Origin: Lepidodermella squamata | Lineage: Eukaryota; Animalia; Gastrotricha | Assembly: GCA_047495785.1 (NCBI GenBank) | Contig: JBLDXI010000110.1 | Coordinates: forward strand, 1 to 64,000 | Length of the DNA stretch: 64,000 nt | Direction of reading: 5' to 3' | Part shown: piece after piece, positions 12,801 to 62,467 of the stretch | How positions within the stretch are numbered: position 1 is the first letter of the stretch | Layout: each line of letters begins with the position of its first letter | Program-made: the position numbers and the translations under genes | The notes under the pieces: model-generated | Seen by the model: only the letters and a program-made list of their open reading frames with translations | What the model was told of the DNA's origin: nothing | Databases searched by the model: none

Positions 12801-13933
12801 CCTCCGCTGGTGTAGTGTAAAACGGACGATTCGGCGATTGGCGATGTAGGCGATGCTGGCGATTTGAGAGAAAGGCCGTATTTGATGTTTTCGAACCGAG
12901 TTGACCCCTCAACCCTGGGCTATACTATTGGAAGAAATACGGTATATTAGCACCTCAAAAATGGCGAATGTATTGTATGTCAAATTTCTAAAAAATGACC
13001 ATCCAAACAAAACATAATATTCCTAACCTAGAGCGAATCTAAAAAATCTAGGTCTAATTAATTCTTAATTTAACAATTTACCTTTGGCAACGTAATGTTT
13101 GAGTTGTAGAACAGGAGACTTGTAGCTCAGCGTCTTCTTACTTTCCATGCTGACGGGGTCGACTCGCGCCAGCACCGCATTTCGGCCGTCGTTGACTAGT
13201 TTCACGATGCGATACGGCCCGATATACCGCTTCGTCCAAACCTTGCCACCTTTTCTCCGAGGTTGCGATTGCGAGGGCTTCTGTCAGGTAAAATGGCTGC
13301 AGAACCATGCGATAGTTGGCAGCGGAATACCGGATGCGAAACATTCGTTGATCGGTTAACAACAACCTGGACCACCGTTTTATTCGCAGATCGCTCGATT
13401 CTTGGCGGTACTATAATGAGAAACATAACGCGAAATTAATGAAAAATCCACCTCAATGAATTCCAGATTTTGAATTTCTTTTGAATTTACCTGATTTTAG
13501 CGATTTTTTAATACGATTAAAAATATTTTTTTGAAACGAAGATATTAACAAAAAAACAAAAATCAGGTCAAACATTCGAAGTCAATAAAAAATACTGTAA
13601 AGCGGTACAATTTTGGACACTTGCTTCCACGCAAACTAACATATCGCGCCTGCGAATGGAAAATGCAATTTTAGTCCGGTTTTCGACGTATTTCGATCGG
13701 GGCCGTGCCAAGGATCATCCCCGTATTTTTAATTATTTTTTATTCGCAAGCGTAAGCTGTTTATTGTAAGGGGTACCCCAAAAGTACAATTTTGGACAGT
13801 AAGAAATTAGCAATAAAATTGATAATAAAAAATACACCTTAATATTGGCGTAACTATTTTTGAATCGAAAAATTCATTTCGTTCGTTGCGGATTTTTTTC
13901 ATTCCGAAATTTTTCAAATACGCTATCTCTGCC

Positions 13934-14250
13934 ATGGTTCGGAAACAGAAGAAAAAGGTTAAGCAATACACTGATGAAGAGATGATCGATGCGATTACCT
14001 TGGTCAAATCGGGTGCACATCCTTTACGCGAAGTTTACAAAAAGGGTCGAAAATTGGGCATCTCGTTGGGAACGTTCAACAACCGAGTCCTCCAGCGGCA
14101 CAGCGGTTCCATTGGCCACCCGACCGTCTTTTCTCCCGACTAGCTCGACTCGTTAGGGCCACTCAAGATTGGGCCATTCCGCTAACAAAGGAAGCGATGA
14201 TGGAAATCGGGTCTAAAATTGCTTCTATCGAGTTGGCGGATGACTGGTTT
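13934..14250 (+). pseudogene. Transposase N-terminus: pipsqueak-type HTH plus CENP-B/Tc5-type HTH, disrupted
   Basis: MVRKQKKKVKQYTDEEMIDAITLVKSG...LGISLGTFNNRV...GHPTVFSPD* (TAG at 14141), then after a frameshift QDWAIPLTKEAMMEIGSKIA...ADDWF. Confidence 0.75.
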
Positions 14251-14781
14251 AACGTCACTCCCGAATTTCAAAAATATATCGATGCGGCGTATGTCATTGA
14301 AGATGTGCAATCTGACGGGAACTGCTTGTTCCGCGCCCTTAGTATCCTGCTTCTAGGAGCTCAAACTCAACATTCCGCTGTTCGAGCGGCAGTTGTGAAG
14401 TACATCAAGGAAAACGAAGATGTGCTCTTACCGTTAAACGACGAAGAAGGCGACATTTCCGTGGAGGGTTTCGTCACAGAAGTGGAGCGACTGGCCAAAG
14501 CGGGTGAATGGGCCGGCAACAGCGCCCTCGTTGCCTGTTGTGAGGCCTATGATGTGAAAATCAGGGTGTTGCAACCAGACTTCTACCAGCCTGGGCGTAT
14601 ATTCGAGCCATCTGATCATTCGATCAGCCCTACAGAGCTGACTCTGGCCTACGTGAACCGAAATCATTACTGGGCGCTGAAACGAAAAGCACCCGAACGA
14701 CGACAGTTTTCTCCTGCCTCGATCGGTCCTATGTCCGATTTCAGCCAAAGCCGCTCAAATTGCCGCAGAAGTCGCTTGTAA
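14197..14781 (+). CDS. OTU-family cysteine protease (deubiquitinase) domain, in frame with the end of the CENP-B-type HTH
   Basis: VQSDGNCLFRALS (Cys at 14323), H.AVR..VVKYI, EWAG, LAYVNRNHY (His at 14665). No stop within the domain. Confidence 0.85.
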   Translation: MMEIGSKIASIELADDWFNVTPEFQKYIDAAYVIEDVQSDGNCLFRALSILLLGAQTQHSAVRAAVVKYIKENEDVLLPLNDEEGDISVEGFVTEVERLAKAGEWAGNSALVACCEAYDVKIRVLQPDFYQPGRIFEPSDHSISPTELTLAYVNRNHYWALKRKAPERRQFSPASIGPMSDFSQSRSNCRRSRL

Positions 14782-15904
14782 GAAAAAGCGAGTCGCAAAA
14801 GATTAAGCCAAAGTTCTTGCTATGCCTCATAACCAGCTATTTGGTGTTTGGACCATTCCTATTATTTTCGAGTTTCAACAATAAATTCTCCACCATGTGT
14901 ATGAAAACCTATCGCTAAAAGTCCTTCTTTGAGAAATAAAAATCTTGTGTTATCATATATCAGATATCATCAGTTGCCGAAACTAAGTTGACAGCGAGAG
15001 GTGTGGGTGATTGAAGTTTAAGATAATCACAAGGTTAGATTTTCTATCAAAAACGTGAAAAAGTCCTCCTAAATGGGTGTCCAAAATTGTACCACTGTCC
15101 AAAATTGTACCAAAACGTGTCCAAAATTGTACCGCCTACCCTGCCTACTTTGCTCGCATGCCACGCAATAACCGCCTTATAGAAGCTCGCGAGCGTTTGG
15201 GAATTTCATCTTCTAGTCGAGATCTTCAACCCTGTCGCTTTTTACACACGTAGCTGCTATAGTAAAGGCGGGGCGACGTCTCAAAATTGCAATTTTCGCT
15301 GTTTTTTCCGGATTTTGTATAAAATCAACCATGATGGTTGCAGTCTCAACAAAAAATTTGGTGGTAGCTATCAGTGCTGAGTATTTTTAGAAAAAATCCT
15401 AGGTCTGAATTCCTTATGGTTCTTGAGATAAAGCGTTGTGCGTGAATTTTTCAAATTTGTACCTGTATAAAATTGTACCATTTTACGGTAATTCAAAATT
15501 TAAATACCGTATTTTTTCGAATAAGGGCCGCAGCGACTATTTTCCTGATATTTTGAAAACGGCCTAAAAACGCGGCGATTATTTGGGTGCGGTCTTTAAT
15601 CGGATGCGGCCTTAATTTCATGGTTCAAAGTCCAGTCTTTTCAGTAAAAGTTTTGAGCAAATTAAGCTGAAGAATCATCATTCAACAATAAAACCTGATC
15701 GTATCCTCCGAGTCGTCCTCAGCACACTCAACTTGGCGCCAAGCGGACTTTATAGGGTCGTCGCTGAATGCTCTAAAAGCAGATCATCTAGGGCCGGGCA
15801 TCCAAGGATTGTAACCTAGACTGGTCAACGATCTCAGAACCGAATCCAGAGCGACGCCGAAAGGACTTGTTTAAGGCCCCGCCCTAGCATCACGAAACGG
15901 AGTG

Positions 15905-16650
15905 CTAGGGTTCGGGCTTAAGCGAACTCTGACCGAAATAAATAGATTCGATACCGGCCCGTTTGCGAAGGTCATCGGTATTGTGCCACGGCGGAAGGCG
16001 CAGGGCAATTCTGAGAGCTTGGTTTTGTATCACGAGTTTGTTTTGAGGCGAGCCATTGATACCGACCCAAGCAAGGCTGCCGAATATTAGCACGCTTCTT
16101 ATGCAGGCTTTGTAGACTGTTACGGCCGCTTCTTTGCTTAGGCCGAAACTTCTCCTACAGACGGCATGCAGTGCCACGAAACGCTGCGCCGCCTTTGCGA
16201 TAGCCAAGTCGATTTGCTTTTTGAATAGCAGCTTCGAGTCAATTGTCACACCCAGGTATTTCACCTCGTTGTGCCATTTCAACTCTGTGTCATCCAACTC
16301 AATAGCTGACTCGGGGGGGTTTGACGTGTTCGAAATTCGAATCGCTTGGCTCTTTCCGGCATTCGCTTTCAGCCGCCATTTCTTGAAGTAAGCCGAAACT
16401 TTCGACATGCCTTCGTTAAGGTTGGCGCGGGCGACCTCGCCTTTCTTGCTTTTTGAGATAAGTGCAATATCATCGGCGAAAAGGCAGTTAGACACCGATT
16501 TCGGCAGGTCCCGCGGTAGGTCGGCCGTATACAGAAAGTACAGTATCGGGCTCAGTGGTGAACCTTGCGGGACACCGCCGGTGATTTGCCGTACGCTACT
16601 ATGGCCGTTGCCTACCCGGCAGCTGAATTCGCGGTCGGTGAGGAAGTCCG
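15905..16650 (-). mobile_element. 5'-truncated LINE (Jockey/I-group-like) RT C-terminal half
   Basis: DFLTDR...GVPQGSPLSPILYFLYTADLP...LFADDIAL...KWRLKANAGKS...KYLGVTIDSKL. Confidence 0.9.
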
Positions 16651-17115
16651 CACTCCATTTGATATTCGGATCCTTCGCCTGGTCCAGCACTTCATCGTCT
16701 TTGTACCAAACAATTTCAGGCGGCGGGTGCCGAGAAGCCGGGCATCGCAGTACAGCGGAATTATTGACAATAGCCGCCACATTTTTCACAACTGCGATTG
16801 AGTCGATAACAGGCGGGACTAGGACGTCGAGTTTGAACAGCTTAACCAGCCGACCAGCGGCGTTAGCGGCGACAGGCGTAAATCGCCGAATCAGATCGGG
16901 CGACTCGGCTGATTTTCAACCGGCGGCCGTCGCTTTCAATCCGGACTTTCGTTGTGTTAGTCGGCGGCGGCGGGACAGGCGCGACTAGGCTGGGCGCCGG
17001 GGTGAAGTCGTTGTTCCAAGCCAGGTCGTTTTTGAACCCGCTGATTTTCGGCGATGGGAAGCCCTCGGCGTCGCAGTTGAATTCCATCGTGTTATTCACG
17101 ATGATTTCGAAATTT
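16651..17115 (-). pseudogene. Hemicentin-like I-set immunoglobulin fragment (about 1.5 domains)
   Basis: FNCDAEGFPSPKISGFKND...LKISRVARSDSAIYAC (frameshift) NAAG...KLDVLVPPVI...VLRCPASRHPPPEIVWYKD. It has a W-to-G substitution and a frameshift near 16865. Confidence 0.8.
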
Positions 17116-25660: not shown

Positions 25661-26280
25661 AAAGCCGAAATCTGTGAAATCTATGCCAACAAAGTTACTA
25701 CGCATGCAACTTGCCATCTACCATGCTGTGGGAACCTGCGCATCTGTCTATGGGGAAGAATAAAGAAGACGTCGCAAAGGCCTTGCTCAGTGCAATTTTT
25801 AGAAACAACCCATAGCTTTTATCAGTTGAAAGCATCTAGCGTCTGATTGTAGTTCTTGCTGCGGTTTCCCATGATTTCTTCTTTTGTCGATGTAATATTC
25901 CTCTCCTCTGTGAAAAGGCTATCTTCATTCGTTGTACCCGTTTTCGAAAGTCGATGTCATCAATTTTAGGCTGATAGGTAGAACTTCTACCAATACGGTA
26001 TATTCAGTTTTTTAGAATAATGGACGTTTTATTTTAACCACACTCCACTTTATTTAATTCGGTAGAGAGGATCGTTTTAAGTTCTTAGGGTGTCTGAGCG
26101 CCCTGAGGAGGCTCTTTGTCGCAGTTTGCCGATTTCGGAAGCTCTTACTTGTTTTGTGACAAATTATGCTTTGAATAAAATAAGAAAAACTACCAACTGT
26201 CGAATTTTCCAAAACCTGTTTTCAGGATTATTATTGGTTTCTTTGTTTCTTTGATAGGCTTCTTTAGTGTTTTTTTAAAC

Positions 26281-27015
26281 ATGGATACGGCTGGCGAAGA
26301 CTTGGCGATGGTCGCTATCGAAGCCGCGAGAAACGGCAATGTGAAGACTGTGAAGCGCTTGCACGAGCAAGGCTTCGATTTCAGCTCCAGCTTCAATGGG
26401 AAAACAGTGCTGAACGAAGCGGTTTTGAGCGGAAATTTGGAAGCCATCCATTTTGTCCTCAAACATTATCCTGAAGGGCTGAACGCTGCGTCAGGTCGCT
26501 TTGGTGGCGGGACGCCCTTGAACTGCACGATCGGCATGTCGAACGAGCATGGGACGGAGCAAGCCCTGCGTGTCGTCCGCTTCCTCGTCGAGGAATGCCA
26601 TGCCGACTTGGAGGCACGCGATCATGACGGATACACACCTGTGGCTGTCGCTTGCTTTCAGGATTCCACGGCGACCCTTAGATACCTTATTGACCTGAGG
26701 GCCCGCTTCCGAGGCAGCAACCTGCTGCCCTTAGTGTGCGCGGAAGTTGGGTCCAAAAAATCCGCTCGCCTGATTTTGCGGAACTGCCCGGATTTATTGA
26801 ATCAAGTGACTGCGGGCGACGGAAAGACGGCACTAGAAATCGATTGCCGGCTCAAATTCCAAAGCGTAGTTGAATTCAAGGTCGATGTCCATGTCGGATC
26901 GCCTATTCTATCCTGCGCGGGTTCAGCGGCATGCGCGCAGATTCTGGTTGAAAATGGGGCCGACCTTGGAGAGACAGACGTCGGCGGCACCAACATTCTA
27001 CACTTACTGTTTTAG
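26281..27015 (+). pseudogene. Ankyrin-repeat gene, internally deleted copy
   Basis: AARNGNVKTVKRL, GKTVLNEAVLSGNLEAIHFVL, GGTPLN, DGYTPVAVAC, AQILVENGADL. It has a 12-nt deletion relative to the copy at 34.6 kb. Confidence 0.8.
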
Positions 27016-27625
27016 CGCAGACATTCCCACTTCGAAAATCATAGGTGTGGTCGATTTCGCCTAAGGTCTAGGTTTAGTTGGTTTAGGTCAATGCTAATAT
27101 TTCCCAGATTGAAAATTAGTAACGAATTTCAAAAAAATTGTTTTCTCAATTTTCCATTGGTGAGGAAAATTGCAGCCATCCATCATCTCAAATATTTTTA
27201 TTATTTTCCCTGTTTTTTAGCCCTAGCATTTCTTTCAAAGAAATCGCCCTTCTGCCCAAAAGAATGAATTCATCTGCTTCTTGCGATAAAAATTGAAAAA
27301 TAACGGAATTGGGTTCAAATGTAAGTCGTTTTGGCCTAGTTTCAGTCAAACCGATTTTGCCCGATTTCCGCATTTTTAATTTCCGATTTCTTGGAACCAT
27401 CGGATAGCCCGTGAAATTCTAAGCACGCCTTTTTGTCTTTTTCAAGGCATTAGGATAACGAAAACTGAAAATTTAAGGTGGATCTGTAGGGAATATAAAA
27501 TTCGAAATTTATGACTTAAACCGCATTGCAATACCGGTAAAACAATAGCTTTTGATGAACTCGATACTTGATTTTCACGATACTACTCTTCCCTTTACAG
27601 CGATCGAATAAAATAAAACGCATAC

Positions 27626-27945
27626 CTTGCATTCAGCAGCGTAAGATGGGACGCGACACGATTGACGACCGACAGACTTGCGTACGCTCTGCCTCTCTTC
27701 CAAGCCCATCGCAAATCCACCTTCTCTGCATCTGCCTGCTGACGTTCCATATTCTTCCAGTCCACCCTTAGAGAGGCCGAGTGCCATATTGACCATAGAA
27801 AGCGCTGAAATGAGTGGGTGTTGTCGTGAAAAGTCGACCACGGCTTCGATCGACGGCGACTGGGGTTCGTCAGACTCGCGTTTGCCGTCGTAATACCCGT
27901 CATCATCATCGGCCGTTTTCTGCCACTCGGTAATTACTTTCGAAT
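27626..27945 (-). pseudogene. Degenerate second copy of the myotubularin/FYVE exon
   Basis: DNA is similar to 35757-36130 (ESDEPQSPSIEAVVD; CRSCRVP...AE.K|GTA). Confidence 0.75.
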
Positions 27946-28089
27946 TTTGATCATCGTGGTTAAGGAAGAACCGCTATGGCAGGCGGTGGACTTCCAACTA
28001 ATCGGTCAGAGATGATGAGAATATAGCGCATTCCTTGACGAGACGTGGGGTAAAAGCCGGCTAAGCCCCAGAACAGAAGCCCATTCACG

Positions 28090-28910
28090 TTATGCGAAAA
28101 GATGGGCTCCATTAGGCGCTATCACATCTTTGCTACGCTGCTTCTGATTGAGATGAAGGCGATGTTTCTTATAGCGACGCCAATGATCGGTGGCTGGCGC
28201 TGAAATTAAAACAGGGCGCATCAAGTTAACACAACACCAGGGCGTGAGAGAGCGGAACGGGTCGCCCTCCTGGTACGCGTTTTTGTCGACTACAGCGTCG
28301 TCATCAAAAGTGAGATCGGACACATCGCATGAGTCGAGCCGCGGCGAGTTATTATATTCAGCGTAGTTGTGTAGCTTGATAATCGACCTCCGGTGTCCTT
28401 CCAGGTATTCAAAGCGCGAAGAGCAGCGGCGTCAGTAATAGCGGTGGTAATTAATTGAATTCAAACCCGGCGAGATTTATAGGATTAATCTGCTTCAGCC
28501 GGTACAAAACGGCAATAACTTCACGTTTACGGCTAAAAAGTTGCACACGGCAGATTTGAAAACCGAAAGCGACTGGTCGGCGAGTAACATCGTCTTGGTC
28601 TTCGAGAGCGCCACCCAGACCGGACGCATCAGTCGGTAAAATACATTTCTCGTCCAATAAGACGAAAGGCCAAACATGGCGGCCTTTGAGCTCAATGAAA
28701 GCATTTTCAGCATCCTCATTCCAGTAGAAGTAAGAAGCTACCACCATCGCAAAATTCTTGATAAAACGTCGATAATAAACGGCTAATGAGGTAAAAGCTC
28801 CAAGTTTGCTAACCACCGTAGGGACGGGAAAATTCTGGACCTTCGAAACACGGTCGCGAGAAATAGATAAAGAATCCCGGCTAATAGAGTGACCAAGATA
28901 GGCGGTAGAG
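28090..28910 (-). mobile_element. Decayed Gypsy pol (RT end, RNase H)
   Basis: YLGHSIS...NFPVP...YYRRFIKNFA...WNEDAENAFIELK...TDASG...RPVAF. Confidence 0.8.
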
Positions 28911-29713
28911 CCAATGGTTGAGCCAATGGTTACATGATGAAATCCTCCTTAAAGACATTTTTAAACGAATATCCATGTGATCGAAAAAATTGAGCGAGCA
29001 GTCAACGGAAAGAGACTACGTCAATGTCTCATTGAGATGACGAGACAATCTCAAAGCTTTGGAATTGTTCAAATCGATCAAGTTCGAGATTCAAACGTCG
29101 GTTAAAAACGAAGTTTGTCATGGGTTTGTATTAAATTGGGGACCAAGCCAGATATTAGCCATCAAATCGCAAGCTTGTTCAGGTAGTTGTAACGCTAGCC
29201 AGGCATTGATAATCCGTCAAATCCGCAATATTTTCACGATCGCTGAGGTCGACATCGGTACCAGGAGCCATAATAGAACGGTAAAGCGAACCATAATTTT
29301 CAGAATCGCATAATGACGAATAGCGCTTTTGAAATTTCATTAAACTGGGACAAACATTTTCCGGTCGAAAAATTTGGCCACCAAAGATGATTTGAGCTCA
29401 AACCATGACGCCATCATTCGACTTTGCTATATCGACCTTTGCCGAAATACTCGGCGCATTTTCAAACCACAGTCAATAATTATCACCAGCGTACATGGAA
29501 AATGAGTCGCCAGCGGAATTCGTAGTAGTGCACTGGAGTTTCTAGCCGTGAAATTACCGCCGATTAGTATTCCGCGTCGTTTTCCAGTCTTCCGTCAACA
29601 CTGCTTTCCTCCTTGAATAAAGGGCCATTGAAACATTCGTTGCAGCTAGTTAATCAAAAATTGATAGCATTTTGAGGTAAGAAATAATTTTCAAATTCTC
29701 ACTTGCAGAACTT

Positions 29714-31564
29714 TCAGCTGTACAACATGCGTGCAATAAAGTCGTTCAACATTTTGATGACTTCGATCTTCTTCCTCTTCAGCGCCAAGTCGTAAGCGGT
29801 TAACCCAGCCGAATCAGTGGTGAGAAATAACCCGGGCATTCGACTGAGAGCAAAGCTGACCACGTCGACTGATCCACAAGCACAAGCAATATGGCACAAC
29901 GTTTGGCCCAAATTATTTGTGGCTCGATTGTTTGCCCCGGCAGAAGCCAAATACTTGAAGACACGGATTGAATTCTTCTCCGCAGCCAGCAGGAGAGGAG
30001 TTATAGTTTCCTTGGAACAGCACTCTAACTTGGCGCCATATTGCACTAAGATCTTAGCCGCATCGATATTGTCATGAGCGGCAGCTTCATGAAGAGGCGT
30101 CCGTAATGTACGGCCTTGCATGGAATTGACTAGATCTGGGTAAGCTTGAGCTAGGAATCCCGGCGTTTTCTTGCAGTTGTGCGAAATAGCAGCATGCAAG
30201 ACTGTCGCTTTGCTACTCGTCCTAGCATTAATTTCAATGTTGAATTTAGCGATGATGAATTTAAGCAGGTCGACGTTATCCGAGCAGGCTGCGGCGTGAA
30301 AAACTCTGATACCATTTTTGGTCCAGAGGGCAATTCTTCGCTTCTCATTTGGTGACAAGTTACCCAGTGCTGATTGCAGTTGTTTGAAATGGGTCAAATT
30401 GCCTTTCATTGCGGCCTCGTGCAACTTCGGCAGCAATTCATTCACGTCAACGGAAGGTTTTATAGCCGCCGCAGTGATAGAAAACGATTTCGATATATCT
30501 TCCACATTTCGCTCTTCGCGCTTTTTGGCTTGAACCCTGGCATTTTGAACGATTTCAGGAACCTGCCTCGTCGACTTCGACTTCGACTTCGCTATCCAAA
30601 CAAGAGCACTTTCAAGTGGCGAAGTTGAAAAGCTCTCGATGAGCGGATTCGGCAGGATTTGCTCCGAGCCAATAGTCAACTCAATCGAAGACATTTTCGA
30701 ATCGAAATCGTTCAATTCCCTCAGCAATTCATCGTGCGTAGAAACAAGACGATAGAGATCTGAGACTTCGTTCAAATTCATGTTAAAAGCGGATTTCTCT
30801 CGAAAACTCTTCACGAAATCATCGCTCCAGGAAGTTTCACATAACTTGGCGGATATCTCTTTCAATTGACGAAGTTTATCCGTAGTCGCAGCTTCAATCA
30901 ACTGATTTAATCGCCGATATTTGTCATTCATTATCGCTTCCAATTTTTTCGCAATTTCCTTGCATGCCAAGCCAGCTCGAATTTTCGTTAGATTGCTGTT
31001 ACCTTCGATGGTTTTCCGAACTCTTTCAAGCGTCTCACAAGTATTCGGACCCGAATAACTCGTTTTCTATGAAAAATCGGAGGTGCATAGAAAATAAAAT
31101 GACAAAAATAAAACCAACCTCGTTAATAACCGAAAGAATTTCGAGCTTAATTCGCTCTTTGTGGGCAATTTCACAGCGACTGCAGAACTTCGAATCGCAA
31201 TGACTGCACCAGTTACCCAGCGGGCTTGAATGCCAACAAAAGCGACCAGTTTCGGCGGGGCTTGACTTGCCAGAATCATTATCGCCATCGAAATTCTGAA
31301 GGCTTCGACAGTTCTCTGCAATTTCGAATTTGTCAACAAATTAAACGCGTCACCATCTAGCCAGTTGGTTTTTCGACATTTTGAACAGGTAACTTCGCCA
31401 TCTTCTGAGGCAGCAGATTCGATACAACGAAGGCACATTGAGTGACCACATAATGGTAAAATTTTCGGAAATTTAAACAAATCGCAACAACTTTGACAGG
31501 TCAAGGCGCTGATAAGCTCCGAATCGGCAGCGGAAGATGATAACAAAGCCGTAGGCGAGATCAT
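29714..31564 (-). CDS. RING-B-box-coiled-coil-ankyrin (TRIM-like) gene, 2 exons (31564-31119, 31066-29714), one frameshift near 31290-31310
   Basis: C3HC4 RING (CQSC..CGHSMCLRC..CSKC). In the shifted frame, B-box-like CWH......WCSHC....CSRC...H. A 52-nt phase-0 GT-AG intron joins to a 450-codon exon with a helical region and about 6-7 ankyrin repeats (TPLHEAAAHDN, TPLLLAAEKN). Confidence 0.8.
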
Positions 31565-41339: not shown

Positions 41340-44300
41340 TTTCAGCGTTTCCAGGTTCCGTCGGGGTTCTCCTGGAAGAGCACGAGCGCAAATGAAAGTT
41401 GGCGTCACGACACCGAGGACCGTTCGTAGTCACCAACTTCAATGAGGCCAACAACGACTACCAGTTGGTAGCGGTCGAGGATTCCGCTACGACACTTCCG
41501 TGGATGAACCGGCGTAAGCTGGTCTCGTTTCCGGCGTCGAACTCGTCCCAGGCCTCCACGGCCCCGTCGGAAGTGGCACTCGACGCTCAAGAAAACATTT
41601 CTCTCTTTTTCAGCGATCAATCGACGGGCATCCTGCTCGAGCAGCCACGGCTATCGTCTATTTTCAACTGGTGCACCGTTGTGCCTCATTCTACAATATT
41701 TTCATGCGGTTTGGGCTTGAATCCAGTTGTTGAACTTTGATCTAGGAGTGAGTTCCTAGTCTGAGGCACCCAGGAAAGTTTTCAAGGCTTAGATTTGACC
41801 AAGAAAGCGTCTCATCCCAACTTCAAGGACCAAGCCGGCGTGTTTTACATGTCGGTGGATGACCGGCTCTTCCCTCGGCTTTGTCTCATTCTTCCGGCGG
41901 TCCACGTGCCGCAGGTGATCCACCTCGTTCATGCCGCGCCTGGTCTGGTCAACTCGGCCGGTTCAAGGCGCTGGAGAGGATACGAGACTATTGCTGGTTC
42001 CCGGGCTGCTACAGCGCGGTGCGGCGGTATTGCCGAGATTGTGATATCTGCAAGGTCCGCAAGACGGCGAATCAGTCGACGACCGTGCCCTTGGTACCGA
42101 TCAGACACGCAGATGAACCTGTTCGCGCTGGTTTGCATGGATCTGGCGGAGCCGATCGACTACTAGCCGAGCTGCTAACCCTGTATGACGCCTTTCGAAG
42201 CTGCGACAGCCTCGGCATAGGGATGCTCCGAACCAGTCGGTATAGCCGCGCCTCGCTGATATCATCGCCACCGCCATCGGCAAGGCCAACCCGCGCTCGT
42301 GGCTTATTCAGGTGTTGTGTGCCCTCTGAGCTGACAAGACGGCAGTTCATGAGACGGCCGGCGTCTCGCCGCACGAGCTGATGTACGGCTGACCGGCCCG
42401 CACGGCTATCAAGCTGCTCGCCGGCCCGCAAACAGGACCAATCGACGCGCCCACTGGAATGGCAGCATGCCTCGTCGAACCTTGACCGCGCCAAAGCGGA
42501 CGAAGCCCAGGTCTAAAGGCGTGACGCGGCCGGTCGGCGAGGACAAGCGAGGCGAAGAGTCGGGCTCGAAAGGCGCCCAGGTAGCACTCAGCATTGACAA
42601 GCACGCCGGGGTAGCCGTCGAAGTCGGCGCGCTGGTGCTGATTCGAGCGACAGTCATGTGTCCGTTGGAGAGTACTCCGGTATCGAGGCCGGACAGGTTT
42701 TCGACGCAGACGGAGGACAAGCGAGGACCGGCGGGCGGCGTAAGGGTGATGGGCAACTCACAGGTTTAGCCCACATACATGAGGCGACGTGGTCAATGAT
42801 CGCCTGGTGCCGGAGAAGCCAGTCCAGACCCAAGATAAGGTGGTGGCTAGAATTGGACAGTACGAAGACGCGGCGAAACTGGAATTCGGCCCGAGGAAAC
42901 GGCGAGTGGCAGCGAGGCAGTGCCGAGGATCGACAAGACGCCCATCGGCAGTGCGCTTAACGACTTTGTGTACCAGCGGCTGTATGGATAGACCGAGAAA
43001 GGTGCAGAGTTCCGGCGTAACGATGGGCCGTAACGAGGGCGGTCGTTCCTGGAACGCATGCATGTTGTAGCCCTCGGCCATGCCAGGTTGATGGGCGAAA
43101 TTGGGCGGCTGCTGTAACGCCTGTATCGCCGGATGCTGGGCGTGCGCGGCTTGGCTTTGCCCGTATTTTGGAGGCGGCGGTTGTGAGGAACCCGGCTGGT
43201 AGGGCTGAAACGATCCGGCAAACTGTTGTTGAGCGTGTGGCGGCCGTCTTTGTTGCGACTGGCGCTGCTTAGGCTGGTTTGCGCCCCTGTGCCGAAGCGG
43301 CCTCATTACATTCTCGCTGGGCGCCACTTCTACCGGCGCGATGTTGATGGTCGGCTTCGACTATGTCTTCGTATCGTCGGCGCGTTTGAGACGCAACTCG
43401 GCTCGTTCAACGGCTGCGGCCCAGTTGACCAGTACCGGTAGCTGCGGCGGGTAACCAAAGTCCGCCTTAAACTCCTCGAACCGTTGAAGAGTTCGGTTCC
43501 GGGATTCGCCGGTGCGAAGCCCATCGATGAAAAGCTGGGCGGCCAACTCGTCGACGGCTTCCTCAGGGAGTTTCGGGTGAGTTTGCTTCATGTGGCGCCC
43601 GCACGTGTCGTCGAAGATAACAACCGATTTTTCGGTGCCCCGTTTCGGCCGTTCCCCGAGGGCTGTAGACGGGAAAAATCGCGCCGTTGAAGCTCCTTGA
43701 AAAACTGGTCGATGGTTAAAGGCACCCGAGATGCGGCGAGAACGCTACTACATGCAGCCGTGCACTTCTCATTCAGCAGCCCATGAATCTGTTTGATTAC
43801 CACCGGGGTCGATTCCGGGTCAAGATCCTTCAGGGTCTCCCGGCATCGAGGTGCGAAAGTGAGTAACGGCTCGTTCACCCCCTGCTTCTCGAGCAGGTCC
43901 TTCAGCTTGATCGGCGCCGCTAAGGCCGACGAAATGCTCGACGGGGCGAAGTGGACCCGAGACGACGGGATGGTTGCGTTCGAAGCTGAGTCGTAGGCTG
44001 AGTCATGTCGGGTTGAAAATCCGGATTTCAGCGAACTGGATCGTGGCCGTTGAGGCGAAAGGTCGCGATATTGCCGATCCAACGTGTCAATGGCGAGCAC
44101 CCGCCCCAGAAGCTCGCGGTCTAGGGCCTCGTCTTTCGTTCCTGAAGATCTAAGAGGCGATGGTAGCGCAGCACCTGGCCCTCGGAGGCCACCACGACCC
44201 CCGCGAGCGCTGCCTCGGGATCCTCTGCGACCACGGCGACGGAACGCCCTTGCCGCTGCGAGTTGTTCTGCCAATTGAAATTTCCCGGCCGATGCACCAG

Positions 44301-55918: not shown

Positions 55919-56161
55919 GAAAAACGGTGGCTTGCCAAATCATGCGGTTGTGATGGAGAAGTTCAGAAGAATGAACTATCGATACTCATTTGTGCGACGT
56001 GTGCGTGCTGCGGGGAATGACGGGGAACACCCCGTTTTTTAAGCGGGCACTCATAACTCACTCATACCGCCGCACGCAAACGTCGCACAAATGAATATCG
56101 ATAGTTCATTCTTCTGAACTTCTCCATCACAACCGCATGATTTGGCAAGCCACCGTTTTTC
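55919..56161. repeat. About 100-bp inverted duplication of the CR1 ORF2 3' end with a 41-nt spacer
   Basis: 55919-56020 is the reverse complement of 56062-56161, with 1 mismatch in the outer 82 bp. Confidence 0.92.
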
Positions 56162-58818
56162 GATATAGTGAAGAAACGAGAAAATTGTTCGTCCACCATA
56201 TTCAGATAAAGCTTATGGCAGAGAGCTAGATCGTGCAGAAAACGACGCATCTCTAAGGATAACATTCCTAATTTCCCAAGTCTTTCTTCATATGAGGCAC
56301 CTTCAATTGTCGAGTAGTATGAGCTGCAATATAATAATCTTTTCGTGAAACGGGCTTGTACAGATTCTAATGCCTGAATATCCTTGAGCAGATATGGAGA
56401 GTACACAGAAGGGCAGTAGTCGAGTCTTGACATTGTGTAGGTCTTATAAGCCTTGAGGCGAAGGGATTTGGAACTAAATGATTTACAGATTAGGCCGTTC
56501 ATACGATGGCACTTTAATGCGAGTGCTTCACAATGCTCAGAAAAATTCAAATCCTTGTCAACAATTATTCCAAGATCCTTCACAGATTCAACGACATTTA
56601 GTTCGACACCTTTTATCCTGAATTTAAAGGAGAGACCTCTGCTACCAAGCCAAAGTACAACACACTTCTTTGAATTCACGGATAGGCCGTTTTCTTCAAA
56701 CCATTCGATGATTTTGTCCAGGTCCCGCTGCAACTCAATGCAATCGGCTAGGCTGCGAATGGCGTGGTAGAGCTTCGTGTCATCTGCGAAGAATTTTGCA
56801 AGGGACGTCTTGATCAGCTCATTGACATCGGCAGTAAAAATCAGGAAAAGCAGTGGGCCCAAAACCGAGCCCTGAGGCACGCCAGAGGTAACAGATGACC
56901 AGTCCGAGACGCTTGAGTTAACAACAGTTCTGAAGAAACGATCGGAAAGGAAGGCTTTAATCCAATCGTGAAGCTTGCCACATATGTTGATATCGCGTAG
57001 CTTAGACAGTAATAAAACAATCGGAACAACGTCAAAGGCTTTTGATAGATCGAGATATATCACTATTATATCCAGCATCTGGTTGAGAATTTTCAGCCAG
57101 TCTGCTATGCATGATAGTAGTTGCGTTTCGCAACTTCGACGGGATAAGAAGCCGTACTGGTTTTTAGAGATCAGGTTATTTCTGTATAGATATAGGAGAA
57201 GATGTTCCTTAACAATGGTTTCCTGCGTTTTACAAAGAATACAAGTCAGACTAATTGGGCGATAGTTTCCAGCACATGAAGCATCACCGTTACGCTTGAA
57301 AATTGGTGTAACATTGGCGTGTTTCCAAACTAAGGGTATTTCCCCACTGTTTAACGAGAGGCTGAAAATGAAAGCAACAGGAATCGATATAGAACAAGCA
57401 AGTTTCTTAATTAGAACCGCCGGTAGATTATCAGGCCCGCCTATTGGCTTTTCTTTCATTCCACACAACACAGCATAAACACACTCGGGCGAAAATTCAA
57501 TATTCTGCAAACAATCCGATACAGCCTTGAAATTACTAGTAGGCTCAAATTTTTCTTTGTTATACGCACCAGCAAACTGTTTCCTGAAAACTTCAGCCTT
57601 TTCCGAGTCGCTAACAATTGGTTCGTTTTCATACACGATGGCAGGTATAGCAGGACGAGAGCTAAATCGAAGCGAGAAGTAGTTGTATAAATCATTAATT
57701 TCACTATTTGACAGTAGATTGTCTTCATAACTACGCCGGGCCTTACGGTTTTCGGTGTCGTAAAGGCTACTGGCAGTTTTGTAGCGAACATAGTCAGATG
57801 ATGTTTTCCCATTTTTTACCCAATTGGCAAACAAACGACTTTTACGGTTAGATAGCCGCACAAGTTCAGAGGACATCCACGGCATTCGACGCTTCTTTCG
57901 TTTGCGCGATTTACGCCGAGGTACAAACAGCAAGATTCCTTTATAAAGAGCATGAAGAAAACGAGTATAGCAAAGGTCCACAGATAGATTAGCGAATGTC
58001 TCTATCCAGTTAATAGAATCCAGGTAGTAAGAGAAACTGACGTAGTCACATTTGTTAAAGCAGAATACGCTTTTTATCGTTGATTTTTTCTCGACAGCGG
58101 AGAGACGAATATTAATCCTGAATTGTACTACATTGTGATCACATTTCAAAGCAAGCGGCTCAAGAACTTCAACATTAGAAATTATATTAGCTCTGTTAGA
58201 TATTACCAGGTCAAGAATATTATCACCTCTAGTCGGTTTGTCGACGTATTGTATTAAGGCATTAGTCACCATGAAGTCAGCGAATGATGTATAAAGAAAT
58301 TTACCCGGATTCCTAAAAGCAACCCAGTCGAATTCTGGTAAATTAAAGTCACCGATTAGCACGCATATGATGTTAGTATTTAACTGGGACTGAAGATATT
58401 CAACGAGATTAGTGATTGAATTAGTCGGAGAATTAGGTGAACGGTAAACAGCGATGATGCGCAAGGCAACACCATCAACTAAACACTGACAAGTAACACA
58501 TTCAATAAATCCATCATACGAGTAGCTGCTTAGTTTACGTGGATTAAGTGATTTGTGGATGAAGCACGCAGACCCACCACTTTTCAACAGAACTCTATCC
58601 TGCGTGAACGATATATAGCCAAGATTTTCCAACGTATTTACATTTCTATTGTCATTTGTAAAGCCTGATTCCACGACTACAATGATCAGCGGAATAATCT
58701 CAGATATTTTGGATAGCAACTTATCGATCTTATTATTTAGCGAATTGGCATTACAGTAGAAAACTGGAAGGTATGGTTGTATTTGATGCTGCTCTTCCCC
58801 AGTGGGGGCGCCAATGAC
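56062..58818 (-). CDS. CR1-like ORF2: AP endonuclease plus reverse transcriptase
   Basis: FYCNANSLNNK, YRSP, GDFN, PTRGDNILDL, CDH; YRPISLT, YLDLSKAFD, GVPQGSVLGPLLF, FADDTK, DLGI. More than 900 codons open. Confidence 0.93.
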   Translation of the reverse strand, partial: VIGAPTGEEQHQIQPYLPVFYCNANSLNNKIDKLLSKISEIIPLIIVVVESGFTNDNRNVNTLENLGYISFTQDRVLLKSGGSACFIHKSLNPRKLSSYSYDGFIECVTCQCLVDGVALRIIAVYRSPNSPTNSITNLVEYLQSQLNTNIICVLIGDFNLPEFDWVAFRNPGKFLYTSFADFMVTNALIQYVDKPTRGDNILDLVISNRANIISNVEVLEPLALKCDHNVVQFRINIRLSAVEKKSTIKSVFCFNKCDYVSFSYYLDSINWIETFANLSVDLCYTRFLHALYKGILLFVPRRKSRKRKKRRMPWMSSELVRLSNRKSRLFANWVKNGKTSSDYVRYKTASSLYDTENRKARRSYEDNLLSNSEINDLYNYFSLRFSSRPAIPAIVYENEPIVSDSEKAEVFRKQFAGAYNKEKFEPTSNFKAVSDCLQNIEFSPECVYAVLCGMKEKPIGGPDNLPAVLIKKLACSISIPVAFIFSLSLNSGEIPLVWKHANVTPIFKRNGDASCAGNYRPISLTCILCKTQETIVKEHLLLYLYRNNLISKNQYGFLSRRSCETQLLSCIADWLKILNQMLDIIVIYLDLSKAFDVVPIVLLLSKLRDINICGKLHDWIKAFLSDRFFRTVVNSSVSDWSSVTSGVPQGSVLGPLLFLIFTADVNELIKTSLAKFFADDTKLYHAIRSLADCIELQRDLDKIIEWFEENGLSVNSKKCVVLWLGSRGLSFKFRIKGVELNVVESVKDLGIIVDKDLNFSEHCEALALKCHRMNGLICKSFSSKSLRLKAYKTYTMSRLDYCPSVYSPYLLKDIQALESVQARFTKRLLYCSSYYSTIEGASYEERLGKLGMLSLEMRRFLHDLALCHKLYLNMVDEQFSRFFTISKNGGLPNHAVVMEKFRRMNYRYSFVRRLRAAV

Positions 58819-59496
58819 CTATTCACGGAAGATTTCAGAAAACATAAGCGAGTCACATATATTCACGTGCGAGTCAAGAAGGTGTATGAATTTCTCATAC
58901 GATGGCGCAGATTTTTTTACGACCATCTCTTGTTTTTCAAGCATCCTTTCAAACTTCATATTAAAGTCAGTACAAAATGTCTCGAAGCTCGGGGCTAATG
59001 ATGGCTGATAATTTTTGCTGGTCTTTGCCGGACGATATTCGCAGACTTGAGCTACACTTGGCATAACTGAAAGGAGATGGTGAGAGAACGAGGGCGTTTC
59101 AGGAGGCTTGTCAACTTGTTTATCGCATCCGCAGAAATAACCCACATTACTGTCTATTTTAGCAATCAATATCAACACATTTTTGGGCAATTTCGAACAT
59201 TCCGAGTGGACACTACAGCCGCATAGCCGACATGCGATAGCCGATTGGAAATTTTTAATCCCACAGTCACATTTAACACACATGGATTTCTTTTGGTTAT
59301 CGAACCCTGATATTGCTTCGAAGTCCTTCACGTTGATCGATGTCTGTCCATACGGCAGGTTAAGACGATTGAGTAGCACTGTCGGTACCAGCTTGTTGCT
59401 GTCTGCACGTGCTGACGTTTCGTTTGCCCTGGAGGTCGGTGCTTTACTAGCGCGTGCCGCTCTAGTGCTGTTTTGCTGGCTGGCACGCGTTGACAT
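58819..59496 (-). CDS. CR1-like ORF1 with a PHD finger
   Basis: CVKC...IACRLCGCSVHSEC...YFCGC. Confidence 0.8.
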   Translation of the reverse strand: MSTRASQQNSTRAARASKAPTSRANETSARADSNKLVPTVLLNRLNLPYGQTSINVKDFEAISGFDNQKKSMCVKCDCGIKNFQSAIACRLCGCSVHSECSKLPKNVLILIAKIDSNVGYFCGCDKQVDKPPETPSFSHHLLSVMPSVAQVCEYRPAKTSKNYQPSLAPSFETFCTDFNMKFERMLEKQEMVVKKSAPSYEKFIHLLDSHVNICDSLMFSEIFRE

Positions 59497-59977
59497 GATG
59501 GTGTGGTAGGTTGAAGTCCGGAAAATTTCAAATTTCAAATTCAAAACTTGGAATTTGGACCCTTGACCGGGCACGGAAAGCGGCTTGTCGATGCCCGGTT
59601 AGTGAAAATAGGCGATTGGTAAAAAAAACAGGTAATACTTGCTTTTTGGTGACGCGGTGCAGTCGGCGAGAGTCAGTTGCAGTCCAACGCCAGAGCCACC
59701 ACGACACAGACGGATTGGATAAAAATGTTCAATAGTAATTTAACCGTGCTAGCGCTGTCGAAACCGGGTGTTAGGAAACCCGGTACGCACTACACGTCTC
59801 CTATCTTAGAATTCGAAAATCGATACGCAGATATTTCGACTATATGTCAGATATTTCTGGACTACTAGAAGCATTGTCTGTGAACTAGAACAATATATGC
59901 TGTTTCAGGGGTGAGGCGCATCGGCCCTTTTTAGTTGCTAAACGTCGCGAGACAAAATGCAAAAATAAATCAGTGTA

Positions 59978-61042: not shown

Positions 61043-62467
61043 ATGTCATCGCGCAGGAGCCGTAAATCAATGTTCGACGCGGTTACTTTGGATTTGCGCC
61101 ACATTAATAGCATTCCGTTCAATCGCAACAACCACACAATGGCAGGTTATATTAGGTCAGAGAACCTTCGGTTTAACGCGGCCAACTTGCAGGGCCACGA
61201 AAGAGGCACGCTGCTTAGGATGGGTCTGACTAGCGGGGGTTTGGGCGATCTTTTCCAGGCATGTGAGGACGAACTAGCAACCAGCCTGAGTTGGGAAACT
61301 CTAACAAACCTTTTGATAAAGAAATACGACGGCGAAATCCACACCCACCAGGCAAAACAGTTGCTTAACAACTGCTCACAGGGTAACAGGCCCATGTGGG
61401 AGTTCATAGCAGAAATGAATAAATACGCGGAGATTGCGTGCCCAGGGGAGGACGCGAGAGCGATCGAAATTAGGGAAGGGGCGGTTATGCAGCAGCTCGT
61501 GCAAGGCATGACTAACAGGCGTCTGGCCCAGGAAATCAGCAAGAAGCAAGGGCATAATAAATTGACGAAAATGAGCGAGGTCCTTAAGTGGATCGAAGAA
61601 GAGAACGCGGCAGCCTCAAGATTGGCGGCAACGGCACAGCCAGCCATGGTAAACGCCGTAGAAACCACGAAAATCGCAGAACAAGAAGCTTTCGCGTTGG
61701 GGTATCAAGAAGCCCTGAAGCAATTCCAACTCCAACAGCATTTCCAGGCACCAGTAGAGACGCTTCAAGCCCCTACACCTCAGCCACAGATGAACGTAGG
61801 GTACAGCCACACCTCCAGTTTCATCCCAAGATACGAGGCCACACCTTTCACAGGGAATCAGCAAGCGGAGACGCCAAGACTACAGCCGGTAGAGACTCCG
61901 AGACCCTCAGCGAGACTCACGTCATCAACGACCACGATAAACGCGGTAAGTAGGAGTGAGCCCGACCTCCCAAAATCAGTCCTAGAACGATTTGCAGCGC
62001 AGGACAAAAAGTTCGAAGATCTGCAAGACGTGCTGGAGAAGTTAATCAGGGTGGTACAGCCCATTGCAGCATCTTCGCCAATGCCGGGAGCGCCAGGGGG
62101 AGGATTGCTCCGCAGTAGATCCCCAGCCCCTCGGGAGAACTGGAGCAACGAATCATCGAACAGAGCACCGGGCGTAACCGGAATCACGAACGCACCCGTG
62201 AAAGCGGCGCTAACCAGGCCGGGAGATCAATCGATCAGGAACATCGGCGACAGCCTCCGAAGGATCTCATTCTCGCCGAATCGCAACCAGCGCAGCGTAT
62301 CACGGGACCGCAGCCAGAACAGGGGTTGCAGAACTTGTGGCTCAGGAACCCACAGAGAGCAATGGTGCCCGCAGACACACGAAGGATTGAACGAAGTCAG
62401 TTGCTTCGGATGTGGAGCTGACGACCATCTGTCGTCATCATCATCCTGCCCACGAAAAAACCAGTAA
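61043..62467 (+). CDS. gag: Gypsy Gag (474 aa)
   Basis: Capsid-like helical region (W..L...L...Y; QG......F) and two C-terminal knuckles CRTC....H....C and CFGC....H......C. Confidence 0.9.
   Translation: MSSRRSRKSMFDAVTLDLRHINSIPFNRNNHTMAGYIRSENLRFNAANLQGHERGTLLRMGLTSGGLGDLFQACEDELATSLSWETLTNLLIKKYDGEIHTHQAKQLLNNCSQGNRPMWEFIAEMNKYAEIACPGEDARAIEIREGAVMQQLVQGMTNRRLAQEISKKQGHNKLTKMSEVLKWIEEENAAASRLAATAQPAMVNAVETTKIAEQEAFALGYQEALKQFQLQQHFQAPVETLQAPTPQPQMNVGYSHTSSFIPRYEATPFTGNQQAETPRLQPVETPRPSARLTSSTTTINAVSRSEPDLPKSVLERFAAQDKKFEDLQDVLEKLIRVVQPIAASSPMPGAPGGGLLRSRSPAPRENWSNESSNRAPGVTGITNAPVKAALTRPGDQSIRNIGDSLRRISFSPNRNQRSVSRDRSQNRGCRTCGSGTHREQWCPQTHEGLNEVSCFGCGADDHLSSSSSCPRKNQ

What the first reader, a model, noticed from the sequence alone, without database searches (positions are those of the whole stretch)
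13595..15488. pogo/Fot1-type DNA transposon with an OTU deubiquitinase where the DDE domain should be
Seen: a TA-flanked element with TIRs and five copies of a 15-nt motif that could be transposase-binding sites. Its coding region runs psq-HTH, then CENP-B-type HTH (..DWAIPLTK..DDWF), then in frame straight into a complete OTU domain (DGNC Cys at 14323, HY His at 14665), with no DDE core. The HTH part has a stop and a frameshift, while the OTU part is open and has its own ATGs at 14197 and 14200. The residue two after His is W rather than the usual D/N. Known: OTU domains occur in some Helitrons, some LINEs and viruses, and Ulp1-type proteases occur in Mutator-like elements. I do not know of OTU as a regular pogo cargo. 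Inference: this is either a deletion derivative of an autonomous HTH-DDE-OTU family or a non-autonomous element that captured OTU. A TIR-binding deubiquitinase could act as a sequence-targeted anti-silencing or transposase-stabilising factor.
Basis: partly seen in the sequence, partly recalled or inferred. Interest (0 to 1): 0.78.

Follow-up and report, generated by a model that had tools for sequence, protein, structure and literature searches.

The report
Broken pogo-like transposon carrying OTU protease
This is a real but decayed 1.9-kb cut-and-paste (pogo-like) jumping gene that has lost its DNA-cutting domain and instead runs its DNA-binding remnant straight into a complete ubiquitin-removing (OTU) protease domain; the pairing is unreported for pogo in the papers I could search, but it fits a known habit of transposons.

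Summary
Window 13595-15488 is a TA-flanked element with 25-nt TIRs (20/25). The motif GTACAATTTTGGACA occurs 5 times exactly and once degenerately (0.15 expected). ORF 14197-14781 is an OTU domain: Pfam E 5e-10, OTUD3 fold TM 0.83, Asp-Gly-Asn-Cys and His-Tyr motifs aligned.

The upstream HTH is too diverged for Pfam. A language-model search and a weak fold match both point to psq-type HTH. Contigs of one public run hold a sister copy in which a 13-nt stretch and three further bases restore one open frame, reading ...PTVLSPEEEENLARLV...DWAIPLTK..., a pogo-style linker by my recollection. The same run holds shorter MITE-like derivatives cut just inside the inner motif copies.

No DDE domain is present here. 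No pogo-OTU fusion appeared among 1.84 billion representative proteins, where the best hit is 34% identical. The OTU lineage is unplaced.

Most likely this is an internally deleted, non-autonomous member of a pogo family with an OTU tail. Earlier notes of this scan report pogo transposase-OTU fusions on other DNA of this genome; I could not fetch them, so the link is untested. The window copy is broken, and a TIR-targeted deubiquitinase remains speculation.

The parts
13593..13594 (.). left TA target-site duplication
   Evidence: read directly from the sequence; matches the TA at 15489-15490
13595..13619 (+). 5' terminal inverted repeat, holding the outer copy of the 15-nt motif (13605-13619)
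   Evidence: (I2, I4, I8)
13784..13798 (+). inner copy of the 15-nt motif, 179 nt from the outer one; candidate transposase-binding site
   Evidence: (D4); the MITE-like joint 13799>15059 lies just inside it
13934..14143 (+). N-terminal ORF remnant (69 aa) with a psq-type HTH, ending in TAG at 14141-14143
   Evidence: three helices predicted at pLDDT 56; Pfam and PDB sequence searches blank
14139..14142 (+). break point: a 13-nt stretch present in the sister copy is missing behind 14139, and 14142 reads A where the sister copy has C; together these create the frameshift and the stop
   Evidence: smaller differences at 14040 (2 nt) and 14049 (1 nt) blur the psq helix
14143..14259 (+). remnant of a second, CENP-B/pogo-like HTH (ARLVRATQDWAIPLTKEAMMEIGSKIASIEL) and the junction segment (ADDWFNVT), in the OTU frame
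   Evidence: motif resemblance only; no Pfam or Atlas hit; AF2 gives a helix at residues 16-31 with pLDDT 65-75
14197..14781 (+). open 194-aa ORF starting at ATG 14197/14200; OTU domain about 14260-14690; Cys codon 14323-14325; His codon 14665-14667
14880..14885 (+). AATAAA, 99 nt after the stop codon; possible polyadenylation signal
   Evidence: read directly from the sequence; not tested
15078..15132 (-). three inner copies of the 15-nt motif (15078-15092, 15096-15110, 15118-15132)
   Evidence: (D1)
15464..15488 (-). 3' terminal inverted repeat with a degenerate motif copy (15464-15478, 2 mismatches)
   Evidence: (I2)
15489..15490 (.). right TA target-site duplication
   Evidence: read directly from the sequence

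Best explanation
Window 13595-15488 is a non-autonomous, internally deleted and further decayed copy of a pogo-superfamily DNA transposon whose transposase carries a C-terminal OTUD-type OTU domain.

The deletion removed the end of the second HTH, the whole DDE core and any linker or intron. It joined ...IGSKIASIEL(ADDWFNVT) in frame to the start of the OTU domain (PEFQKY...).

The element keeps both TIRs and all copies of a 15-nt motif. The motif is arranged as an outer and an inner site at each end, like the IR/DR layout of some Tc1-type elements (layout recalled from my own knowledge). These are the likely binding sites through which a full-length relative could move the element in trans.

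This copy later lost 13 nt and gained a stop, so it can no longer make an HTH-OTU fusion. At most it could make a 194-aa OTU-only protein from ATG 14197/14200.

In the parent family, by analogy with Ginger1 and Helitron OTU domains, the OTU would remove ubiquitin from the transposase or from chromatin or repair factors at the transposition site.

Shown: the element's anatomy, the OTU fold and catalytic motifs, the breaks, a sister copy with an intact N-terminal frame, and MITE-like derivatives. Inferred: pogo parentage, the deletion origin, mobilisation in trans and the OTU's role.
For: - TA TSDs, 25-nt TIRs and the motif enrichment (7 found, 0.15 expected).
- OTU domain by Pfam, PDB sequence search and predicted fold.
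- D58, G59, C61 and R81 are invariant, and H175 and Y176 nearly so, among 66 relatives.
- psq-type HTH by the Atlas feature search, with a weak LCoR fold match.
- The sister copy in run X1 restores one frame of 111 aa with PTVLSPEEEENLARLV...DWAIPLTK. My rebuilt contig is 500 nt long, the same as the record.
- Contig joints 13799>15059 and 13740>15289 show that internal deletion is the normal fate of this family. The first joint keeps every motif copy.
- Contig depth at the element's ends is 2-8 times that of the interior. This is weak evidence, since the tool warns that depth cannot rank parts of a stretch.
- Earlier notes report pogo transposase-OTU fusions elsewhere in this genome (leads only, untested here).
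- Transposase-OTU fusions are documented in Ginger1 (PMC2836005).
Against: - No DDE-bearing copy with these TIRs or this OTU was seen. None is in the window.
- None of the 20 longest of the 150 best OTU relatives, scanned with Pfam, carries DDE_1.
- The best OTU relative is only 34% identical and is a host-type oomycete protein. The tree places the window OTU on a long unsupported branch.
- Pfam does not recognise either HTH piece, so pogo parentage rests on weak evidence.
- The sister contig stops at 14251, so it is unknown whether it continues into OTU or into a DDE.
- The earlier notes call the OTU of the full-length elements 'spliced', whereas here the OTU is contiguous with the HTH.
Confidence: 0.6

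Rival explanations
1. HTH-OTU is itself the working product. A non-autonomous element family encodes a roughly 287-aa protein with the transposase's DNA-binding head and an OTU protease. The family keeps this protein because it acts at the family's own ends, as a repressor in the manner of the P-element KP protein or as a targeted deubiquitinase. The window copy would be a dead member of that family.
For: - The sister copy has an intact 111-aa N-terminal frame up to the contig end. If it continues as the window does, the ORF is 287 aa with a single terminal stop.
- Two OTU variants occur in X1, one identical to the window and one with 12 substitutions and a 3-letter gap total that would keep the frame if it is one indel (records 5 and 6).
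- Their depths (41 + 69) add up to that of the single N-terminal contig (111). This is weak, given the tool's warning about depth.
- The OTU catalytic motifs are intact.
Against: - The junction in the sister copy was not observed.
- No RNA run holds the stretch.
- The window copy is broken.
- The substitutions between the two copies in the coding N-terminus are mostly non-synonymous, as expected for neutral decay.
- No homologue with this architecture exists in either protein library.
Confidence: 0.2
2. Gene capture. A pogo-type non-autonomous element picked up a fragment of a host OTUD-like gene or its cDNA, and the in-frame fusion is accidental. No full-length family with DDE plus OTU ever existed for this lineage.
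For: - The nearest solved and database relatives are ordinary host OTUD3/OTUD5/OTUD1-type proteins.
- The OTU segment has no intron, as a captured cDNA would.
Against: - Identity to any known OTU is at most 34%, so there is no recent host donor in the libraries.
- Fusion exactly in frame behind the HTH, and the reported recurrence of pogo-OTU in the same genome, fit a family trait better than a one-off capture.
Confidence: 0.15
3. The element is not of pogo descent. It would be a TA-targeting TIR element of another Tc1/mariner-group family, or an unclassified one, whose N-terminal helices only resemble psq/CENP-B HTH.
For: - Pfam and PDB sequence searches give nothing for either HTH piece.
- The fold model is of low confidence, pLDDT 56.
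- The TIR starts CTGT/CCGT rather than the CAGT I recall for many pogo and Tc1 elements (from my own knowledge).
Against: - Atlas features point to HTH_psq and CENP-B_N clusters only. All ten of the best hits that carry a family share a family or clan.
- The top fold hit is a psq-type HTH.
- The restored linker PTVLSPEEEE followed by a second helix-rich block is typical of pogo and Tigger transposases (from my own knowledge).
Confidence: 0.05

Closest known systems
pogo superfamily DNA transposons (pogo, Tigger, Fot1, Passer; reviewed in PMC7386202 and PMC7325037)
   Same: TA target-site duplication, short TIRs of 40 bp or less, an N-terminal psq-type HTH followed by a second HTH, and non-autonomous and MITE derivatives.
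   Different: There is no DDE_1 catalytic core in this copy, and an OTU domain follows the DNA-binding remnant. Neither survey mentions OTU, protease or ubiquitin. Repeated inner and outer motif copies are not a feature I know for pogo.
Ginger1 DNA transposons with a C-terminal OTU or Ulp1 domain on the transposase (PMC2836005)
   Same: A cut-and-paste DDE transposon family whose transposase carries a Pfam OTU (PF02338) domain at the C-terminus. The role is proposed but untested.
   Different: Ginger1 uses a Gypsy-integrase-like DDE with long TIRs, not an HTH head with TA targeting. Here the DDE is absent.
Helitron/Helentron OTU and VTD deubiquitinase domains (PMC4224331, PMC9741609)
   Same: Transposon-borne deubiquitinase-type domains. 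Two of the 150 nearest OTU relatives are Helitron proteins (P0007, P0012).
   Different: Those are rolling-circle elements with Rep-helicase. The tree gives no supported grouping of this OTU with them.
Human OTUD3, OTUD5 (DUBA) and OTUD1 catalytic domains (4bou, 3tmp/3pfy, 4bop)
   Same: Best sequence and fold matches. The DGNC Cys motif and the HY His motif align.
   Different: Identity is only 20-27% in the Foldseek alignments. Trp replaces Asp two residues after His. The setting is a transposon.
P-element KP repressor (an internally deleted transposase that keeps the DNA-binding domain; from my own knowledge)
   Same: An internal deletion derivative that would keep the transposase's DNA-binding head.
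   Different: KP has no added enzyme domain. No repressor activity is shown here.

Membership tests
pogo superfamily transposon | TA target-site duplication | tested here: met
   TA at 13593-13594 and 15489-15490 directly outside the TIRs.
pogo superfamily transposon | Terminal inverted repeats, mostly 40 bp or less (PMC7386202) | tested here: met
   25-nt TIRs matching at 20/25; I2 gives 30 nt at 80%. The contig joints keep both ends.
pogo superfamily transposon | N-terminal bipartite DNA-binding domain: psq/CENP-B_N HTH plus HTH_Tnp_Tc5 | tested here: inconclusive
   Pfam is blank for both pieces. The Atlas feature search points to HTH_psq/CENP-B_N. The LCoR psq HTH is the top but non-significant fold hit. 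The second HTH rests on motif resemblance only.
pogo superfamily transposon | DDE_1 catalytic core with a DDxD triad | tested here: not met
   No room and no match. The HTH remnant runs into OTU within about 30 nt, and nothing else in the element scores. This copy can be only a derivative, not an autonomous member.
OTU (ovarian tumour) cysteine protease, OTUD type | Papain-like OTU fold | tested here: met
   AF2 pLDDT is above 90 over most of residues 41-185. Foldseek finds OTUD3 at E 2.9e-10, TMt 0.83, rmsd 2.5.
OTU (ovarian tumour) cysteine protease, OTUD type | Catalytic Cys in the D-G-N-C motif and catalytic His near the C-terminus | tested here: met
   D58, G59 and C61 are invariant and N60, H175 and Y176 are nearly invariant across 66 relatives. 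The His aligns with the HYD motif of OTUD3.
OTU (ovarian tumour) cysteine protease, OTUD type | Acidic or amide third residue two positions after His | tested here: not met
   Trp stands at that position. Relatives show N, S, D, E, C, T, A or V there, so it is not strictly kept. The Asp of DGNC, which I recall is annotated as an active-site residue in OTUD proteins, is present.
OTU (ovarian tumour) cysteine protease, OTUD type | Deubiquitinase activity | not testable with these tools
   This needs a Ub-AMC or di-ubiquitin assay.
Transposase-OTU fusion elements (Ginger1-like arrangement) | OTU on the same polypeptide as a DDE transposase | tested here: not met
   This copy has no DDE. Full-length pogo-OTU fusions are reported only in earlier notes of this scan and were not verified here.

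The most novel reading that the evidence does not exclude
The intact sister copies encode a roughly 287-aa protein that joins the transposase's sequence-specific DNA-binding head to an active OTU deubiquitinase. It is carried by a non-autonomous element and kept by selection. It would bring deubiquitinase activity to the family's own 15-nt end motifs, to counter ubiquitin-dependent silencing or transposase turnover, or to act as a KP-like regulator.
Probability: 0.12. Interest if true: 0.8.

Novelty: new variant of a known kind. Interest (0 to 1): 0.5.

Why it matters
Deubiquitinase-type domains recur in unrelated transposon groups such as Ginger1, Helitrons, Mutator-like elements and some LINEs. 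[quoted passage not shown]

A pogo lineage with OTU would add the most widespread and most easily assayed cut-and-paste group to that list. Pogo and Tc1-type elements work in cell-based transposition assays (PMC9976928, from its abstract). A small element that pairs only a DNA-binding head with OTU would offer a natural minimal construct. It could show whether the protease acts at the transposon ends.

This particular copy is broken. Its value is as a pointer to the family, not as a functional gene.

Tried and rejected
- Pfam at E up to 10 and PDB phmmer on the two HTH pieces gave nothing usable.
- The word-indexed protein search found no homologue of the 212-aa HTH-OTU piece or of the 69-aa N-terminal piece.
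- The exact look-up of the 194-aa ORF is not on record.
- The metagenome scan had no tblastn-confirmed hit.
- The phage megablast search was irrelevant and blank.
- The Atlas feature search on residues 1-40 of the second HTH gave no usable hit.
- The Atlas fold search returned only generic OTU clusters.
- The OTU tree has the window row on a long branch (1.56) with no supported clade, so the donor is unresolved.
- The search for long subterminal inverted repeats beyond the TIR and motif gave only a weak gapped alignment. I rejected the idea of long TIRs.
- I considered a 3' end at 15135, as in another reading of this stretch (s1-395205). I rejected it because the 15464-15488 end keeps the terminal TAC(T/C)GTAAA, and the MITE joint 13740>15289 includes DNA beyond 15135.
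- N-terminal parts of C-terminal-OTU relatives (P0095, P0117, P0137, P0080 and others) show no transposase domain.
- I tried to identify the organism through the ankyrin ORF and found only generic ankyrin hits.
- The findings look-up by sequence was blank.
- I did not send the rebuilt 111-aa sister-copy N-terminus to Pfam or to structure tools. It has no reference and would have had to be typed, so that step is left out.
Full report
**What is there**

The window is TE-rich animal DNA. It holds LINE RT/endonuclease ORFs, a gag ORF and ankyrin and RING ORFs.

The element spans 13595-15488 (1894 bp), with TA at 13593-13594 and 15489-15490. Its 25-nt ends match at 20/25 in inverted orientation. 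The repeat finder reports 30-nt arms at 80% (I2).

The 15-mer GTACAATTTTGGACA is exact at 13605 and 13784 on the + strand, and at 15078, 15096 and 15118 on the - strand. A 2-mismatch copy lies in the 3' TIR at 15464. Counting one more 2-mismatch match outside the element at 52438, that makes 7 matches in 64 kb against 0.15 expected, and no shuffle reaches 7.

Each end therefore has an outer site inside the TIR and one or more inner sites 180-390 nt inside. This recalls the IR/DR layout of some Tc1-type elements (my own knowledge). I found no long TIR beyond these sites.

**Coding part**

From ATG 13934 a 69-aa frame runs to TAG at 14141-14143. A second frame is open from 13978 to the stop at 14779-14781. 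The ORF 14197-14781 (194 aa) starts with two ATGs.

Evidence for the OTU domain:
- Pfam OTU scores E 5.4e-10.
- phmmer finds OTUD3 (4bou, E 1.3e-9), then OTUD1 and OTUD5, with the window's NHYW aligned to OTUD3's EHYD.
- With an alignment of 65 OTU domains, AF2 gives pLDDT 82.6, above 90 for most of residues 41-185.
- Foldseek returns OTUD3 (TMt 0.83, rmsd 2.5), then DUBA/OTUD5, OTUD1 and nairovirus OTUs.
- D58, G59, C61 and R81 are invariant, and N60, H175 and Y176 are nearly so.

The Trp two residues after His is real. Relatives carry N, S, D, E, C, T, A or V at that position, so it does not disqualify the domain.

High-confidence OTU structure begins at residue 41 (PEFQKY..., nt 14263). The junction therefore lies somewhere in 14236-14262.

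**The HTH**

Pfam (E up to 10) and PDB phmmer see nothing in either piece. The word-indexed search is also blank.

The Atlas feature search places the 69-aa piece among HTH_psq clusters: score 0.92, 181 shared features, 17 of 30 hits. CENP-B_N clusters follow. Single-sequence AF2 gives three helices at low confidence, pLDDT 56. Its best Foldseek hit is the HTH domain of LCoR (2cob), which I recall is psq-type, at a non-significant E of 1.6. These are two weak but concordant leads.

**A sister copy explains the breaks**

One public run (X1, Logan contigs, organism coded) holds half of the stretch's sampled words. It may be the sample the window was assembled from, so it is not independent support.

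Contigs cover the left flank with 1 to 5 differences each, and one spans the flank/TIR junction with a single difference. A 500-nt contig covers 13768-14251 with these differences from the window:
- 13 substitutions;
- +AG behind 14040;
- +A behind 14049;
- +13 nt behind 14139;
- C for A at 14142.

I rebuilt it from these edits and obtained exactly 500 nt. From the same ATG it gives one open frame of 111 aa. That frame reads ...GISLGTFNNRV...GHPTVLSPEEEENLARLVRATQDWAIPLTKEEIMEIGSKIASIELADDWF and then reaches the contig end. By my recollection, the PTVLSPEEEE linker followed by a second helical block is the usual join between the two HTH motifs of pogo and Tigger transposases.

So the window's stop and frameshift are secondary damage: a 13-nt loss plus one substitution. 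If the sister copy continued as the window does, it would encode 287 aa. The contig does not show that.

The OTU region occurs in X1 as a contig identical to the window and as a variant with 12 substitutions and 3 gap letters (records 5-7).

**Derivatives**

X1 also has contigs that join 13799 to 15059, just inside the inner motif copies on both sides, so every motif copy is kept. Others join 13740 to 15289 with 31 other letters between.

Summed contig depth is 2-8 times higher over the ends than over the coding part. I treat this as weak, because the tool warns against reading depth this way. Internal deletion that preserves the ends is thus the usual fate of this family.

**Relatives elsewhere**

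The exhaustive search of 1.84 billion representatives gave 1539 OTU hits. The best is only 33-34% identical: tandem-OTU host proteins of the oomycetes Lagenidium and Pythium. Of the 25 listed hits of 440 aa or more, I scanned 20 with Pfam, and 5 of these again by their non-OTU parts. None has DDE_1 or a pogo HTH. Two are Helitron proteins.

A quick ML tree leaves the window OTU on a long branch without support. The metagenome scan, the exact look-up and the Atlas fold search added nothing.

**Earlier notes of this scan**

Notes s1-391705, s1-429988 and s1-422684 report pogo elements elsewhere in this genome whose transposase is spliced to an OTU domain, some with a HIRAN gene. So the scan has found pogo-OTU before, on other DNA. 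I could not fetch those sequences, and the look-up by sequence is blank, which is uninformative. Whether my element derives from them is therefore untested.

**Literature**

OTU on a cut-and-paste transposase is documented for Ginger1, and OTU is also documented in Helitrons (PMC2836005; PMC9741609). The two large pogo surveys contain no mention of OTU, protease or ubiquitin (PMC7386202 and PMC7325037). Four further full-text searches found no pogo-OTU paper. Repbase and Dfam could not be queried.

**Reading**

Most likely (0.6) this is an internally deleted, non-autonomous and now broken derivative of a pogo family with an OTU tail. It would be moved in trans through its motif-bearing ends.

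Rivals:
- A maintained HTH-OTU product (0.2).
- A one-off capture of an OTU gene fragment (0.15).
- Not of pogo descent (0.05).

The OTU's role is inferred by analogy only. It might protect the transposase, or act on chromatin or repair factors at the ends. No RNA data were available.

Profile and structure searches of the rebuilt sister N-terminus were not run, because that sequence has no reference and would have had to be typed.

Noticed in passing
window 15491-16000: The right flank of the element is itself a high-copy repeat. Summed contig depth in run X1 is about 900-2000 per bin, against 85-180 for the left flank. Loose ends suggest other copies begin near 15539 with CAGTATAAAGGCCGC..., so the element sits next to, or inside, another TIR-type or MITE repeat.
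   Followed up: no
window 15905-16786 (-): A 293-aa ORF starts with about 46 residues of an immunoglobulin I-set domain (Pfam E 2e-5) and continues in frame into the C-terminal half of a reverse transcriptase (RVT_1, E 5e-20). This looks like a LINE fragment fused to, or inserted in, an Ig-domain exon.
   Followed up: partly
window 56062-58716 (-): An open 884-aa ORF has an endonuclease (Exo_endo_phos_2) and a reverse transcriptase (RVT_1). It is an apparently intact non-LTR retrotransposon ORF2. An unannotated 250-aa ORF lies next to it at 58819-59571 (-).
   Followed up: partly
window 26251-31561: Ankyrin-repeat ORFs lie at 26251-27012 (+) and 29714-30967 (-), next to a RING-finger ORF at 31067-31561 (-). 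The nearest database ankyrin proteins are only about 30% identical.
   Followed up: partly
window 61043-62464 (+): A 474-aa ORF has a retrotransposon gag domain (PF03732, E 4e-6).
   Followed up: no
window 42001-44000: A local GC peak (0.61, against 0.40-0.50 elsewhere) overlaps unannotated ORFs at 41881-42381 (+), 42758-43327 (-) and 43588-44274 (-). The last of these has no Pfam hit.
   Followed up: no
protein P0003 (ENA, 486 aa; third-best OTU relative): It carries two OTU domains behind a 2A-like 'DIELNPGP' motif. This suggests a LINE or virus-like polyprotein context for that OTU.
   Followed up: no
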